Source of the DNA: Ruditapes philippinarum | Taxonomy: Eukaryota | Direction of reading: 5' to 3' | Assembly: GCF_026571515.1 (NCBI RefSeq) | Contig: NW_026855476.1 | Coordinates: 310,001 to 374,000 of the forward strand | Length of the DNA stretch: 64,000 bases | In this document: positions 11,419 to 22,343 of the stretch, one piece after another | How the letters are laid out: each line of letters starts with the position of its first letter | How positions within the stretch are numbered: the first letter of the stretch is position 1 | Notes under the pieces: generated by a model | Seen by the model: the letters and a program-made list of their open reading frames with translations, nothing else | What the model was told of the DNA's origin: nothing | Databases searched by the model: none | Made by a program: the position numbers and the translations under genes

Positions 11419-14400
11419 ATGAGAGGCCCTCGACCAATGCCACGTCCAGGAGGTCCCCATGGTATGCCAGGTCCAAACAGACCTCCAGGTCCAGGGGGAC
11501 CTATGGGACCAGGCATGAGACCTCCAGGACCAGGTATGAGGCCTCCTGGCCCTCCTGGTATGGGACCTAGAGGTAAGTTTGATGGTTTTCTAGTTTTACA
11601 ATGGTTTGACAATGTTCATTGTTTGTGTATTAACAGTGACACTAGGTTTTTGGATACATTGTAGTTCAACATTTTTAGTTCTTGGCTTCTTGCTTTATTT
11701 AGGCATTAAAGGAAAGGTTGTTTAAGAATTTTAAGAGTTTAGTTCATTACTTAAAAAGTTAAGTAGTTTACATAATATAAAAAAATTGTTGTTGATCATG
11801 CAATATATAATACATTATAAAAAAACTTGTTGTTGATCATGAAATGTATTTCTGAACATATGACTTGTAATAAAAATTTTGTCTTACTTCTAAGGACCAT
11901 TGAGACCACAAGGACCTGTAGGCCCAGGGGGCCCTGGACCTCAAATGCGACCACAGGCACCACCCCCTGCTGCAGCATCCAATGTCACAAATGATCCACG
12001 TGGTGCTCACTGTAGAATATTTGTTGGGAATTTAAACACTATAGCTATGAAAAAAGAAGATGTTGAAGTTATATTTAGAAGGTACGTAAATTTCAAGTAT
12101 GTCATAGCATTTGAGAAAGAAAAAGTTCTGGATTATTATGGGAAAATGTTAACACCCTTAAAGCAGGGTGACTGGGTCCAAGAAACTTTATCATCCTGAT
12201 AATGGCCCAAAAGCACATGAGTATTAATGACTCCTTTACAACTTCAACAGCTGGTTGGGACTCTGCTTAAATATTCTGACCATTACAGGATCCCAACATG
12301 ATGTTTGCTTTACTAGTAGCTGTCAAGATGAAAGGGTATTAATTGGAATAAATTTTGGTCTCGGCTAACCTGCATCTCTTTACCATCATTCTATAATGAC
12401 CAATTATCTCGCATGGTTTTCATTAAAGATTTTTCTGTCCGTTTTCAATTTAAAACAGTCAACTTTTGGTTTTATCAAATACAACAGAGTGTTTTTTTCA
12501 GACATTTTAGCATACGTAATTACATCCCTGTCTGCACAGCACTTGAGTGCTCCAAGTCAGAGCTTTACTTCTTAACACTTTCCCAAATTTTTAGATATAT
12601 GAAAAAGTTTCAAACTAAGTTTTAAACCAAGGTATTGGAAACTTGACCAAGCCATATATAGAGGGTATTACACAAAAGATAATAATTCCGTCTTTATGGC
12701 CTAAGAATTGCAGCAGTTTCACAAGCCTTTAAAATGCTTGATTTAGCTTAATAAAATAGGTAGGATTGGTATTGACCTTTATTCATGAGAGCAAAGCTGC
12801 ATGACTTGAAGTAAAAATAACGATCCTTTCAAATCAAATCAGAGCTCCAGATAATTTTTTAGGGCAATGAGTATTTACTCATTGATTTTTTTGTGAATGA
12901 GTAAAACTTGAAATCTGAAATTTGGCAGGAGTATTTGTACTCCTTAAAATGTATGTAAAAGAGTAAAACATTTATTATGCTTCCATGTTTATTGCATTAT
13001 CGTATATACTTGTAATACAAGATATGTCAAAGTCATTTCTTTTGCTTTCTGGACTCCCTTGGTTTATAATCTTGCATTTCCAAACGGCAAACGTTTTATC
13101 TGAACCTGAGGCATGTTTCTATTGCTCATACATGGCAGCGCTAATTATTTCATTAATTATAACCTTAACTGATTTTTTTCGGCATAAAATACGAGTCAAT
13201 CGTTTTATTTTAACTTTTGACAGCGACATTGTACCGGATGTTTATGAAATTGCGTTAATTCCACCACCTTACTATACATACGATAACATCCGATGACAGT
13301 CGGAACTACAGGAAGTTTCCGTTAGACGTTGCAAAGCATTCATACAAAGTTTATTCCACCACCATACTATACATAAGATAACAACCGATGACGGTCGGAA
13401 CTATTGGAAGTTACCGGTAGACGCTTGCAAAGCGTTCAGACAAAATTAAAAATAAGATAATCACCGAGTTTAATTTCGGTTACGTTAACGCGAAAGAAAT
13501 GTTGCTCAATGCGTAACCTGAATTTTGTGTGCGTTTTCATACGCTTAAATTTTGTTTTGAATGCGTAAACGTGTTATTTCCATGCGTAATTTACGCGTAT
13601 ACGCATCTTATCTGGAGCCCTGTCAAATTAAAATTTATTTATAGTGGGTATATATATATATATAACATTGCACAAAACATAAACTATTTATAGCTTTTGA
13701 CCGACATACATGCATGTAAACATAAAACTCGTAAAAGAAGCACATTATGATAATCTTTGAAAGACAAATTGGTAAACAAGTTAAATTAATCGTAATACTA
13801 TAATGTGGTATGTAGACACTACATGTAATAGTTAAAAATGAAATAATAATGAATTATATTGACATGCTAGAGATAACATTTAAATTACTTTAATGACATA
13901 TATTATGTAAGTGAAACAGTTTGAAAAATATATACAGACTTCCCGAAAGTTGAAAAAAACTGTCAGACATTCGGTCTGACAAACCATGAAAATCTGTCGG
14001 ACCGAAACAAAATCTGTCAGACCAAATAAAATTGATCAAAATCAAAGAAAAACTTGTGTTTGTATTTCTAAGACACTTTTTGTATTTCTAAGACACTTTT
14101 TGTTTTTTATTTTTTCGCCGTAAAAATCGGCACAATCCGTACAGCGCATTTTCATCTCCTCCCTGTCATACACCAATGATTCATGGTTCTGCTTCCATTT
14201 TTCATTAAATTTCGTCTCGGGTCTATTCTTTTCATCCTTTTATTGCTGTTCTGCGCACTCTTCTGACGTAGATTTTCGGTTTTTCCCAGGTTTGGCACCT
14301 TTAGCGACGCCATTTTGTATACATGCTGCTTGGATAAAAGCCGGACAGTCGGACCGATCCGGAATAAAAAATTGTCGGACCTGATCAAAATTTATCGGAC

Positions 14401-20400: not shown

Positions 20401-22343
20401 TTGTCTGTATTGAAATTGTTGTGGCCGCAAATGCTTATAGACAATGTTTCATGTTTCAGAGATAGAAATTTTGAAATCTTGACAAACAAGCTAGTATTAG
20501 ATGTAAATAGTTTTCGTTGTTGTTAAAATTCAGCTGGCCAGAAAAGCTTGAAAGGGGGGCTTTTGCACTAAATATGTCTGTTTTGGTGCCGTGCTTCCAT
20601 GGCAAAAATAGTAAAAGTCTTTGACTTTGAACTACTTGCCCCTTACTGTTGTGGGTTTTAATTCTGCTGTGGACTTGTTTCATTTACATTTATGTAAGAT
20701 TTGTGGTTATACTCTGCATGTGCCTAAAATGATGCTTAGATGTGCAAAATTGAACTTCCTGCACTAGTACTGCTGACATTTACATGGTTGATGTGACTGT
20801 AAGCCAAATAAAACACAATATTACTCTTTAAATTGATGTTCCGCAATGCAGTACTGCCACATCTACAATCACATCAAAAATTATTCCTTCACAGGAGAAT
20901 AGATGATGGAAATACTGTGTAAAATTTCCTTAGATAAAATCTAGTTGAACACTGGAAGACAGAATCCTACAGTTATCAAAAACTTGATAACATTTAATGA
21001 AAAAAGAATATTTAGATTGATTTAAGTTTTGTTTATGTGGTTTTAAACAGCCTCTAAAACAGCAGAACCTGAGCGTAATCTGTTATGTGCAGTGTGTGAT
21101 GCCATGTTTAAAACAGCCTGGGATCTATGTCAACATTGTCAGGAGGAACATAGCATAGAAATATTTAAGGTAAGTTCATTATACCAGAGAAAGTAAATTT
21201 TTAAGTAGTAGTAAATAAAAATAGAAAAGGGAAATTTATCCTTTTTAAGAAAACTGATTATGACATAAAAAAAAATAAAAATTGATGAGTGTTTGTAGTT
21301 TAGAAACCAAAAAACTAAAGCCAAATGCAGTAAACAGGGGCGTCAAAGGTCGAGTGGTTTTTTAAAATTGAGACTGCAAACCCCCTGCCTTGCCTTTTAG
21401 TTTAAGCCCCCAAGCACTTTTTATTTTGTCAGGTTAGAAAGCTATTTGGGACAGCTAGGTTATGGAGTGTCTGTGGTTCTAGTGAGGTGCCTGTTTGTGT
21501 CTGAGATAATGCACACAGGGCAGAAATATTTAATGAAAGTACAGTAAAACTGATCAAGACCAAAAAATATTTCTTAATGAAGGTGATTACAACAAACTAT
21601 AATTGAGAAGTTTTGATGTCGAGGGTTAGCTCATTTAAAATAACTTGAAAATAGTTTAGGAACATAAAAATATGTAAGAAGAGTAGAATACATGTAAGTT
21701 TTGGTTACTGAAAATAAGTTGAAAAATTTCAAGGGTAGGAACAGGACAGTGTTTGAAGGTGAGTACTGTAAGAAATGTCCTCATATCATAGCATGAGTGC
21801 TATCATACACTGACGTGTAAATACTGTATACTGTAGTTTTAGAGCCAGAGATCAAAATCTCCCAAGATAAGTGAAATATCATGTTTTACAAGTAAACATT
21901 TATATTGTAATGATAAACGCTATTATTATCTTTTCTACATGTCTCGTCTTATGCTATTATGTATGTTCTAATATTTTGTTTGTTTGATTGGGTTTTACGT
22001 CACACGGACACAGTATAGGTCATATGGCGACATTCCAGTTTTACTGGTGTAGGAACACCTCGGGTGCCCTTCCGTGCATTATTTCAGGAACAAACGGGTA
22101 CCTGAGTAGAACCACTGACACTCCGTAAGCTAGATTTTAGAATATTAAAAATAGTTAAAAAATACAAGCGAAGCTGTTGTACTTGAGGAGAAAGTTGAAC
22201 ACTATGTTGCCTATACAATTCAAAATATTTAGATAGTTTAATAAATATATTCATTGTAAATATCTAATTTGTAGCATGTTAAAGTGGAGTCCGAAAACAA
22301 GACAGAAAGTAATGAAGTGAACGGTGACAAAGATAAAGAATGA
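11419..22343 (+). CDS. hnRNP C/RALY-family RRM protein with Gly/Pro/Met/Arg-rich N-terminus and two BCL11-like zinc fingers (343 aa, 8 coding exons)
   Basis: Exons 11419-11572, 11895-12081, 15673-15797, 17764-17818, 18631-18812, 20238-20378, 21051-21169, 22275-22343. All introns are GT-AG with consistent phases, total 1032 nt. The [25 protein letters not shown]...[11 protein letters not shown]...[20 protein letters not shown] closely matches hnRNP C ([24 protein letters not shown]...VHKGFAFVQY...[20 protein letters not shown]). Exon 6 encodes a CCHC finger, exon 7 a C2H2 finger and exon 8 an acidic tail. Confidence 0.88.
12840..13622. mobile_element. Non-autonomous hAT-like TIR element with 6-bp TSD (hAT6-type), intronic
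   Basis: TIR CAGAGCTCCAGATAA / TTATCTGGAGCCCTG; TCAAAT duplicated on both flanks; subterminal GAGTA and TGCGTA repeats. Confidence 0.82.
13935..14434. mobile_element. MITE with CAG...CTG termini, intronic
   Basis: TIR CAGACTTCCCGAAA / TTTCGGGAAGTCTG; TATATA on both flanks; repeated GTCGGAC/GTCAGAC subterminal motifs. Confidence 0.8.
16630..17661 (+). mobile_element. 5'-truncated Helentron-associated (HINE) element with internal ~150-bp tandem repeats
   Basis: About 7 repeats of aaaactaggtca...aaaccttgttaacactctag...aaacttggtcag. The 3' end has GGTGAGCG, a short hairpin and CTTGTT. Confidence 0.75.
19738..19992 (+). mobile_element. Short degenerate HINE-like element
   Basis: Begins TTTAGCTC, contains gaaacttaac/cccataactct core motifs shared with the element at 33571, and ends in a hairpin-like gctgtcatatgaccag. 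Confidence 0.4.
21340..21522 (+). mobile_element. SINE fragment
   Basis: tRNA-like head remnant (ggtcgagtggtt) and a body (gtggttctagtgaggtgcctgtttgtgtctgagataatgcac) homologous to the reverse complement of 22073-22118. Confidence 0.5.
21977..22131 (-). mobile_element. SINE 3' portion with (AAAC)n-type tail
   Basis: tgtttgtttgattgggttttacgtcacacggacacagtataggtcatatggcg. A related tail occurs at 57682-57730. Confidence 0.6.

What the first reader, a model, noticed from the sequence alone, without database searches (positions are those of the whole stretch)
11419..22343. hnRNP C-type RRM fused to a BCL11-like CCHC + C2H2 zinc-finger pair in place of the coiled coil
Seen: the spliced protein has an hnRNP C/RALY RRM, a basic NLS-like patch (PAQKKAKV), then [26 protein letters not shown] (C-x2-C-x12-H-x4-C) and [34 protein letters not shown], then an acidic tail. 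Known: BCL11A has DLLTCGQC...FIEHKRKQC (ZnF0) followed by [33 protein letters not shown] (ZnF1); the EP, F..AW.L.QH.Q..H...I[YF] pattern and the order of the two fingers are both reproduced here. The x12 spacing of the first finger is closer to ZNF341/ZFP64-type CCHC fingers than to the x14 of BCL11A. Vertebrate hnRNP C tetramerises through a leucine-zipper coiled coil, which I cannot see here, and BCL11A ZnF0 is reported to be a multimerisation (tetramer) module. Inference: an RNA-binding protein that swapped oligomerisation modules, or one that can co-assemble with BCL11-family transcription factors and so link nascent RNA to chromatin repressors. I know of no description of this architecture but cannot exclude one.
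Basis: partly seen in the sequence, partly recalled or inferred. Interest (0 to 1): 0.88.

Follow-up and report, generated by a model that had tools for sequence, protein, structure and literature searches.

The report
Clam hnRNP C with zinc fingers
This is a real, expressed clam gene for an hnRNP C/RALY-type RNA-binding protein that has two unusual zinc fingers where vertebrates have a tetramerising coiled coil, and this layout is the normal, unstudied form of the protein across protostome animals.

Summary
Eight GT-AG exons (11416-22343, + strand), plus a probable 6-nt start exon at 8625-8630, are frame-consistent. Transcript contigs from two independent studies carry junctions 17818/18631, 18812/20238, 20378/21051 and 21169/22275. 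The model is colinear with an annotated Mercenaria mercenaria protein (304/339 residues identical).

The protein has a Pro/Gly-rich N-terminus, an hnRNP C/RALY-type RRM (PDB RALY 1.6e-28), an NLS, a CCHC finger, a C2H2 finger and an acidic tail.

It is not peculiar to this genome. The same RRM-CCHC-C2H2 order is found in 229 proteins from molluscs, a brachiopod, flatworms, nematodes, Priapulus, chelicerates, a millipede, crustaceans and insects. These are auto-named hnRNP C, Raly or uncharacterized, and precomputed Pfam lists only the RRM for nearly all. Homology to vertebrate RALY runs from the N-terminus to the NLS and then stops. Fingers and coiled-coil motif never co-occur.

The BCL11 likeness is partial. 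The C2H2 finger's best non-self match in the whole clam genome is ZF1 of a BCL11-like gene. The CCHC finger fails Pfam's BCL11A model (16 vs 27 bits) and resembles other x12 CCHC fingers more.

Oligomerisation is inferred, not shown. I found no paper describing the fingers.

The parts
8625..8630 (+). Probable coding start (ATG ATG) at the 3' end of an upstream exon, followed by a GT donor. The 5' limit of that exon is unknown.
   Evidence: It is the only ATGATG|GT in the 11.4 kb upstream. Joined to 11416 it gives MMNM..., the N-terminus of Mercenaria P0225. The X1 contig has about 289 nt upstream of 11419. Inferred, not read-confirmed.
11416..11572 (+). Exon 1: Pro/Gly/Met-rich low-complexity N-terminus.
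   Evidence: AG acceptor and GT donor; 49/52 residues identical to P0225. Disordered in the AF2 model of the orthologue.
11895..12081 (+). Exon 2: end of the Pro-rich region, the SNVTN-DP motif, and RRM strand 1 and helix 1 (RNP2 IFVGNL).
   Evidence: Aligns to the RALY and hnRNP C N-terminus and RRM.
15673..15797 (+). Exon 3: RRM core with RNP1 (KGYAFVQY).
   Evidence: Pfam RRM_1 at E 1.4e-5 on this exon alone; 38/41 identical to P0225.
17764..17818 (+). Exon 4: last RRM strand (DINIA) and the EPKK motif.
   Evidence: Joint 17818/18631 in two contigs. Aligns to hnRNP C and RALY.
18631..18812 (+). Exon 5: NLS-like basic patch (PAQKKAKV) and a Ser/Thr-rich linker.
   Evidence: Joints on both sides in contigs. 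The P-x-KR-x-R column is conserved across the family and aligns with the RALY NLS.
20238..20378 (+). Exon 6: CCHC zinc finger (Cys to Cys 20258-20323; C-x2-C-x12-H-x4-C), preceded by an invariant D-I-L-I and followed by a conserved L-[RK] and a C-x-C.
   Evidence: Joints 18812/20238 and 20378/21051. AF2 gives a beta-beta-alpha fold, pLDDT 89-94. Invariant D, C, G, C, H, C in 102 sequences.
21051..21169 (+). Exon 7: C2H2 zinc finger (21086-21151; C-x2-C-x12-H-x4-H) with a T-A-W motif on the helix, ending in I-E-I-F.
   Evidence: Joints 20378/21051 and 21169/22275. Trp is 98% conserved. Best non-self genome match is BCL11-like ZF1. hhalign probability 96%.
22275..22343 (+). Exon 8, coding part: short acidic tail and the TGA stop. 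The 3' UTR continues to at least 22900.
   Evidence: Contig pieces 22273-22900 in X1 and 22273-22428 plus 22469-22900 in X8.

Best explanation
The locus is the clam orthologue of the protostome form of the hnRNP C/RALY family.

Shown:
- It is transcribed and spliced as predicted.
- Its N-terminal half (SNVTN-DP motif, RRM, EPK, NLS) is homologous to vertebrate hnRNP C/RALY.
- Its C-terminal half is a conserved cassette of two isolated beta-beta-alpha zinc fingers, CCHC then C2H2, instead of the vertebrate leucine-zipper tetramerisation helix.
- The cassette is conserved from nematodes and flatworms to insects and molluscs.

Inferred:
- The RRM binds U-rich pre-mRNA in the nucleus, as in hnRNP C.
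- The fingers are protein-contact fingers rather than DNA readers. The helix positions that read bases in canonical fingers carry Ser/Thr-Ala-Trp-Asp-Leu and Leu/acidic residues, as in the BCL11 ZF0/ZF1 multimerisation fingers.
- The fingers most likely hold several copies of the protein together. A single weak RRM would then become a multivalent RNA binder, which is the job done by the coiled coil in vertebrates.
For: Splicing. Frames and colinearity with Mercenaria P0225 (304/339 identical, split codons match).

RRM type: PDB RALY 1.6e-28 and hnRNP C 9.7e-28, against 3.7e-9 for the next RRM class.

Homology to vertebrate RALY covers residues 6-152 (N-terminus to NLS) at probability 100% and E 4e-45, and nothing beyond.

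AF2: RRM and both fingers are confident, the linkers are disordered, and there is no long helix.

Family breadth.

Conservation profile of the fingers.

BCL11 relation: the E7 best non-self hit in the genome lies on the same contig and strand as the best BCL11-type CCHC. hhalign gives 96% and 94% for ZF1 and 80-89% for ZF0.

Literature: BCL11A ZF0 forms a crystal tetramer, ZF1 is a predicted dimer, and both have hydrophobic helix faces (PMC12006351). hnRNP C needs its CLZ tetramer for high-affinity RNA binding (PMC8994388).
Against: No direct evidence of self-association. The dimer prediction with zinc gave no support and no evidence against.

The CCHC helix is amphipathic, not fully hydrophobic like BCL11A ZF0.

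The CCHC is below the Pfam BCL11A threshold.

Structural matches of the finger are generic: Foldseek E 1.2 and VIA Z of 3.1 or less.

Conserved Lys/Arg residues flank the first finger (HKK, L-R), so a nucleic-acid contact is not excluded.

Raw RNA reads at the exons were too thin to quantify expression or isoforms.
Confidence: 0.55

Rival explanations
1. The finger cassette is a second nucleic-acid-binding surface (RNA, or DNA/chromatin). It would play the role of the basic bZLM region of hnRNP C rather than that of the zipper, and the protein would act as a monomer.
For: Both fingers have the classical beta-beta-alpha fold. The nearest PDB sequences to E7 are CTCF fingers. Conserved basic residues follow the first finger (HKK, L-R). 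Isolated C2H2 fingers do bind RNA in other proteins (established knowledge).
Against: The canonical base-contact positions are Ser/Thr, Trp (98%), Asp/Ala/Glu and Gln/Val in finger 2, and Ser/Glu/Asp, His/Gln, Ser/Glu and Gln/Glu/Asp in finger 1, so no conserved Arg/Lys/Asn. The fingers are 20-30 residues apart without a TGEKP linker. Neither finger reaches the Pfam C2H2 threshold. The closest specific relative, BCL11 ZF1, is a non-DNA-binding finger.
Confidence: 0.25
2. The cassette is a hetero-association module. It docks the RNA-bound protein onto BCL11-type or other CCHC-bearing zinc-finger transcription factors, linking nascent RNA to repressors.
For: Sequence kinship of E7 with BCL11-like ZF1, and of E6 with N-terminal CCHC fingers of multi-finger genes in the same genome. 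BCL11A and BCL11B hetero-multimerise through ZF0.
Against: No test was done. CCHC spacing and surface differ from BCL11 (x12 vs x14). The family is conserved in flatworms and nematodes with strongly diverged fingers, which fits self-recognition at least as well.
Confidence: 0.1
3. The gene model is an artefact: two neighbouring genes (an RRM gene and a small zinc-finger gene) were joined by the reader.
For: None beyond the a priori risk in reading exons by eye.
Against: Single contigs span E4 to E8 in two studies, and their lengths reach the RRM exons. Hundreds of orthologues carry both parts in one protein. Split codons match the Mercenaria protein.
Confidence: 0.02

Closest known systems
Vertebrate hnRNP C1/C2, RALY and RALYL
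   Same: N-terminal SNVTN-DP motif, RRM (about 60% identity), EPK motif, NLS and acidic C-terminus, in the same order. hhalign probability 100% over this part.
   Different: No basic leucine-zipper-like motif or CLZ tetramerisation helix. Two zinc fingers occupy that position, and there is a long Pro/Gly-rich N-terminal extension in molluscs.
BCL11A/BCL11B N-terminal fingers ZF0 (CCHC) and ZF1 (C2H2)
   Same: Same order: CCHC then C2H2. Finger 2 shares the [ST]-A-W-x-L-x-x-H-x-Q-x-x-H-x-x-x-I-[YF] pattern. It is the best genome-wide match to the clam BCL11-like ZF1. Both are isolated, non-canonical fingers with Trp/Leu on the helix face.
   Different: The CCHC has x12, not x14, and scores 16 bits against a cut-off of 27 on PF25491. 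The fingers are 20-30 residues apart instead of about 100. The host protein is an RRM protein, not a multi-finger transcription factor. Multimerisation is not shown here.
Drosophila CG42458, named in the literature as the fly hnRNP C orthologue
   Same: Treated as the hnRNP C orthologue (30% identity) and found as a TDP-43 toxicity modifier and neuronal marker (PMC5570092). Dipteran members of the finger family (Aedes, Anopheles, Phlebotomus) were recovered here.
   Different: I could not fetch the fly sequence, so it is not verified that CG42458 carries the fingers. None of the papers read mentions them.
   Same: Same [DE]-[IL]-x-x-C-G-x-C ... F-x-x-H-K-x-x-x-C pattern. hhalign probability 96-97% to three clam genes. 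2 of 25 family members touch Pfam CCHC_ZFPM2.
   Different: In two of those three clam genes the CCHC is followed by ordinary tandem C2H2 arrays, not by a TAW finger; none was found after the third, on a short contig. The names ZFP64 and ZNF341 were not tested here.

Membership tests
hnRNP C / RALY family | hnRNP C-type RRM with the preceding SNVTN-x-DP motif | tested here: met
   PDB RALY 1.6e-28 and hnRNP C 9.7e-28, against 3.7e-9 for the next RRM class. hhalign probability 100%. Exon 3 alone hits RRM_1.
hnRNP C / RALY family | Basic NLS downstream of the RRM | tested here: met
   The P-x-K-[KR]-x-[KR] column aligns with the RALY PVKRPR. Sequence level only; localisation was not tested.
hnRNP C / RALY family | Leucine-zipper-like oligomerisation helix (CLZ / bZLM) | tested here: not met
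   No long helix in AF2. The alignment to RALY ends before the CLZ. No PDB CLZ match. 0 of 312 proteins have both fingers and the CLZ motif.
hnRNP C / RALY family | Acidic C-terminal tail | tested here: met
   Exon 8 and the family alignment end in Glu/Asp-rich tails. The tail is short in the clam.
Pfam PF25491 CCHC_BCL-11A | Score at or above the gathering threshold of 27 bits | tested here: not met
   Exon 6 scores 16.2 bits, E 0.011. 0 of 25 family members hit at E 0.01. Two genuine loci in the same genome score 58.7 and 53.5 bits, and exon 6 is not among the 15 listed.
Pfam PF25491 CCHC_BCL-11A | C-x2-C-x14-H-x4-C spacing | tested here: not met
   x12 in the window and in all 102 aligned members. 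hhalign needs a 2-residue gap.
BCL11 ZF0-ZF1 pair | CCHC followed by a ZF1-type C2H2 with S/T-A-W on the helix | tested here: met
   The best and sixth-best non-self hits of exon 7 in the 1.4-Gb genome are the ZF1 exons of the two BCL11-like genes. hhalign gives 96.3% and 94.2%.
BCL11 ZF0-ZF1 pair | Finger-mediated homo-multimerisation | tested here: inconclusive
   The complex prediction returned no answer. This needs biophysics.
Classical C2H2 finger (PF00096 / PF13894) | C-x2-C-x12-H-x3-5-H with a beta-beta-alpha fold and a Pfam score over threshold | tested here: inconclusive
   Pattern and fold are met. Pfam gives 14-15 bits against cut-offs of 25-27. 7-10 of 25 members hit at E 0.01.
Protostome RRM-CCHC-C2H2 family (unnamed; auto-annotated hnRNP C-like or Raly-like) | RNP1, then D-[IV]-L-I-C-G-x-C ... 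H-K-K-x-x-C, then C-x2-C ... W-x-L-x-x-H-x4-H-x3-[IL]-[YF], in one protein | tested here: met
   All invariant columns of A2 are present in the window exons. About 90% identity to Mercenaria P0225.

The most novel reading that the evidence does not exclude
The CCHC + TAW-C2H2 pair is an ancient, portable zinc-dependent self-assembly cassette shared by BCL11 transcription factors and the protostome hnRNP C lineage. On this reading, protostome hnRNP C builds its multivalent RNA-measuring particle through zinc fingers, and the vertebrate coiled coil is an analogous replacement (or the reverse). The conserved orphan C-x-C after finger 1 might add an intermolecular metal site.
Probability: 0.25. 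Interest if true: 0.7.

Novelty: new variant of a known kind. Interest (0 to 1): 0.5.

Why it matters
hnRNP C is a textbook example of an RNA-binding protein whose function depends on oligomerisation: RNA length measurement, suppression of Alu exonisation and 40S hnRNP particle assembly all rest on one short coiled coil.

If protostomes, which make up most animal species, carry the same RRM and NLS chassis with a BCL11-like zinc-finger cassette instead, two questions become testable:
- Is multimerisation an ancestral requirement met by two unrelated modules?
- Does the invertebrate protein work differently, for example as a monomer or with other partners?

The finding also gives the medically important BCL11A ZF0/ZF1 multimerisation fingers a second natural context for comparative study. 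It flags a conserved domain that precomputed Pfam annotation missed in nearly all listed family members, including pests, vectors and parasites (Tribolium, Aedes, Schistosoma, Echinococcus).

For this window on its own, the gene is an ordinary family member.

Tried and rejected
- Complex prediction of the finger cassette (Mercenaria orthologue residues 236-330, 2 copies, 4 Zn). The verdict was 'no answer', score 0.04. It counts neither for nor against binding.
- PDB sequence search with exon 6 gave only chance hits. With exon 7 it gave generic CTCF-type fingers, and BCL11A entries there cover ZF4-6 only.
- Foldseek on the exon-6 model put BCL11A ZF0 (9b4p) first, but at E 1.2, which is not significant. 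The VIA second look gave Z of 3.1 or less, a generic finger fold, and could not align the 28-residue 9b4p chain.
- The ESM Atlas search of the cassette returned generic C2H2 clusters only.
- Raw RNA-seq reads (X21, X23) were too sparse over the exons to list joints. Only the contigs were informative.
- I tried to learn whether invertebrate deuterostomes or cnidarians carry fingers or a zipper. The RRM-restricted search was saturated by vertebrate RALY and the profile search by arthropods, so the question stays open.
- I could not confirm that Drosophila CG42458 carries the fingers, because no sequence was at hand. The papers use it only as a marker or RNAi target.
Exons were searched one by one by reference. 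The database orthologue P0225 and alignments of database proteins stood in for the full-length protein.

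
Full report
**1. What is in the sequence**

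On the + strand there are eight exons with canonical AG/GT boundaries and compatible phases:
- E1 11416-11572
- E2 11895-12081
- E3 15673-15797
- E4 17764-17818
- E5 18631-18812
- E6 20238-20378
- E7 21051-21169
- E8 22275-22343, ending in TGA

The only ATGATG followed by GT in the 11.4 kb upstream is at 8625-8630. Joined to 11416 it gives M-M-N-M..., which is the N-terminus of the closest annotated orthologue. The true start is therefore probably there. This is inferred and not read-confirmed.

The encoded parts, in order:
- a Pro/Gly/Met-rich stretch
- an S-N-V-T-N-D-P motif
- an RRM split over E2-E4
- a basic patch P-A-Q-K-K-A-K-V (E5)
- a C-x2-C-x12-H-x4-C finger (E6)
- a C-x2-C-x12-H-x4-H finger with T-A-W on its helix (E7)
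- a short acidic tail (E8)

**2. Is it spliced and expressed?**

One call of read laying on 17000-22900 showed the following. A single 868-nt contig from run X8 (a 2015 study) and a single 1915-nt contig from run X1 (a 2025 study) each carry the joints 17818/18631, 18812/20238, 20378/21051 and 21169/22275. All have GT..AG ends.

Exon 5 sits at positions 811-992 of the X1 contig and 415-596 of the X8 contig. Both contigs therefore extend into the RRM exons, and the X1 contig extends about 289 nt beyond the ATG at 11419.

Whole-genome searches with E6 and E7 find each only once at high identity. The intron-less form is therefore not a retrocopy.

Raw reads of two 2026 RNA runs covered the exons only 1-4 fold in the sampled fraction. 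That is too thin for joints.

Each exon aligns in order to Mercenaria mercenaria protein P0225 (347 aa; NCBI name 'splicing factor, proline- and glutamine-rich-like isoform X2'). 304 of 339 residues are identical. Five of the six split codons encode exactly the residue found at that junction in P0225; at the E4/E5 junction the two sequences diverge. This also favours the acceptor at 21051 over the in-frame alternative at 21066.

The source organism is coded in the tools. By this similarity it is a heterodont, venerid-like clam with a 1.4-Gb assembly.

**3. A rule I followed**

Exons were searched singly by reference. For full-length analyses I used database proteins returned by the tools (P0225 and alignments A1-A3).

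**4. What family is it?**

An exhaustive HMMER search with E6 alone (46 aa) found 155 representatives at E of 0.001 or less. Local phmmer with each window exon showed that many of them also contain E2/E3-like RRM and E7-like finger segments in the same order.

Cluster look-ups and two further searches named the organisms:
- bivalves (oysters, scallops, Mytilus, Pinctada, Sinanodonta, Solemya, Mactra, Dreissena, Mercenaria)
- gastropods and a chiton
- the brachiopod Lingula
- flatworms (Schistosoma 'putative RNA-binding protein Raly', Echinococcus, Taenia, Hymenolepis)
- nematodes (Ascaris 'RNA-binding protein Raly', Panagrellus)
- Priapulus
- spiders, a scorpion, a tick and a mite
- a millipede
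- crustaceans (Artemia, a barnacle, an ostracod)
- many insects (Tribolium 'heterogeneous nuclear ribonucleoprotein C', Tenebrio, Nasonia, Bombus, Schistocerca, Rhodnius, Bemisia, Aedes, Anopheles, Phlebotomus)

The precomputed Pfam annotation lists only the RRM for nearly all of them. That explains why the fingers go unremarked. One aphid entry is auto-named 'Zinc finger C2H2-type, RNA recognition motif domain'.

**5. Relation to vertebrate hnRNP C/RALY**

The orthologue's best PDB matches are the RALY RRM (1.6e-28) and the hnRNP C RRM (9.7e-28). The next RRM class is at 3.7e-9.

A profile-profile comparison of the 102-sequence family alignment (A2) with 19 vertebrate RALY sequences aligns RALY residues 6-152 at probability 100%, E 4e-45. 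This stretch runs from the S-N-V-T-N motif through the RRM and E-P-K to the P-x-K-R-x-R nuclear localisation signal. Nothing aligns after it.

The RALY zipper motif begins about 20-35 residues further on. In the protostome family the CCHC finger begins at a comparable distance.

AF2 of the orthologue with A2 gives:
- a confident RRM (pLDDT above 90)
- a confident beta-beta-alpha CCHC finger (84-92)
- a short low-confidence helix
- a confident beta-beta-alpha C2H2 finger (81-96)
- disordered linkers and no long helix

Fingers and the zipper motif never occur together: 229 have fingers, 23 have the zipper motif, 0 have both. So 'in place of the coiled coil' is positionally correct.

Which state is ancestral is open. 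I recovered no invertebrate deuterostome or non-bilaterian member, because the result lists were saturated.

**6. How BCL11-like are the fingers?**

*CCHC finger*
- Pfam's BCL-11A-like CCHC model gives 16.2 bits (cut-off 27) on E6. It hits none of 25 family members at E 0.01.
- The same model finds two genuine loci in this clam genome at 58.7 and 53.5 bits. E6 is not among the 15 listed.
- hhalign of A2 to those two exons gives 89% and 80% and needs a two-residue gap (x12 versus x14).
- Three other clam CCHC exons with x12 spacing give 96-97%. Two of them are followed by ordinary tandem C2H2 arrays. No downstream fingers were found for the third, which lies on a 31.6-kb contig.

*C2H2 finger*
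- Searching the whole genome with E7, the best non-self hit (E 0.057) lies on contig C9952, minus strand. It is 48 kb downstream of the best BCL11-type CCHC, inside a 922-aa open frame. That makes it ZF1 of the clam BCL11 orthologue.
- The ZF1 of the second BCL11-like gene is also among the six non-self hits.
- hhalign gives 96.3% and 94.2%, the highest values among the C2H2 fingers compared.
- The shared pattern is [ST]-A-W-x-L-x-x-H-x-Q-x-x-H-x-x-x-I-[YF].

*Structure*
- The E6 model (pLDDT 83) is a plain finger. Foldseek's first row of 350,542 chains is 'Tetramer Formation of the BCL11A ZF0 Domain' (9b4p). At E 1.2 this is not significant.
- VIA-align gives only generic Z of 3.1 or less.

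*Verdict*
The pair, in its order and in finger 2, is specifically BCL11-like. Finger 1 belongs to the wider class of N-terminal x12 CCHC fingers and is not a member of the Pfam BCL11A family.

**7. Likely mechanism**

Conservation over 102 sequences:
- Invariant in finger 1: D, C, G, C, H, C. Near-invariant: L-I before the first Cys, K after the His, and L two residues after the last Cys.
- A C-x-C motif is 88% conserved five residues further on, with no evident intramolecular partners.
- Invariant in finger 2: C, C, H, H. Trp is 98% conserved, Leu 99%, and the finger ends in [IL]-[YF].

At the positions that read DNA bases in canonical fingers, the family has Ser/Thr, Trp, Asp/Ala/Glu and Gln/Val in finger 2. 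Finger 1 has acidic or neutral residues at those positions. There is no conserved Arg, Lys or Asn.

The literature read here states that BCL11A ZF0 and ZF1 carry hydrophobic residues at exactly these helix positions. ZF0 crystallises as a tetramer, ZF1 is predicted to dimerise, and both are needed for BCL11A multimers (PMC12006351).

hnRNP C needs its CLZ tetramer for high-affinity, cooperative RNA binding and for length measurement (PMC8994388).

The most economical reading is that the cassette is a protein-contact module, most likely for self-association, giving the single RRM multivalency. This step is inferred.

Rivals are a nucleic-acid-binding role for the fingers and hetero-association with BCL11-type factors. 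A gene-model artefact is excluded.

**8. What is known**

Full-text searches found no paper that mentions zinc fingers in hnRNP C/RALY-like proteins. The fly gene CG42458 is used as 'the hnRNP C orthologue' in a TDP-43 modifier screen (PMC5570092). It is also used as a neuronal and photoreceptor marker. Its domain content is not discussed, and I could not verify that it belongs to the finger family.

The proteins themselves are abundant in public databases under automatic names.

**9. Verdict**

For this window the gene is an ordinary member of a large family. At the level of the family, the layout is a variant of a known kind that appears undescribed and is directly testable. That layout is an hnRNP C chassis with a BCL11-ZF1-like finger cassette in the place of the tetramerisation zipper, conserved across Ecdysozoa and Spiralia. 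Interest is moderate (0.5).

Noticed in passing
window 754-2979, minus strand: Two adjacent open frames (551 aa and 140 aa) with leucine-rich repeats and a TIR domain. This looks like a Toll-like-receptor-type gene upstream of the hnRNP C-like gene.
   Followed up: partly
window 16633-17609 (intron 3 of the gene): A tandem satellite of 145-bp units (290-bp higher-order unit, 6.8 copies, 75-81% matches). Read depth is in the thousands in RNA and contig runs, with many 'goes back' joints, so it is a high-copy, apparently transcribed repeat family.
   Followed up: partly
window 19167-19363 and 21925-22121 (introns 5 and 7): Short stretches whose depth is tens to thousands of times that of the flanking intron in all four runs. 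They are probably dispersed repeats and were not classified.
   Followed up: no
window 55483-56709 and 58751-59180: A 26-bp minisatellite of 47 copies (91% matches) and a 38/76/114-bp nested array. They coincide with the GC-rich, strongly negative GC-skew stretch at 54-60 kb.
   Followed up: partly
window 21051 vs 21066: A second in-frame AG acceptor lies 15 nt downstream of the used one and would drop five residues (A-S-K-T-A) before the C2H2 finger. Both contigs and the Mercenaria protein use 21051.
   Followed up: partly
window 20339-20347 (E6), family alignment A2 positions 274-276: A C-x-C motif five residues after the last zinc ligand of the CCHC finger is 88% conserved. It is missing in the three nematode sequences of alignment A1 and has no evident partner ligands in the same chain. 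A possible intermolecular metal or disulfide site; untested.
   Followed up: no
G000:C9952:81682-129980 and G000:C12776:124392-124982 (loci L007, L008, L020, L025): The clam genome has two BCL11-like genes. Each has a Pfam-positive CCHC ZF0 exon followed by a ZF1 finger with the S/T-A-W motif.
   Followed up: partly
proteins P0082, P0137, P0025, P0044 and relatives (mite Oppia nitens and unnamed transcripts): A sub-group whose sequences stop within a few to about 20 residues after the CCHC finger and C-x-C (spacing H-x5-C) and show no C2H2 finger. P0082 has the RRM and a long acidic/Ser-rich linker; the others are N-terminally incomplete. It may be a paralogue or an isoform lacking finger 2.
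   Followed up: no
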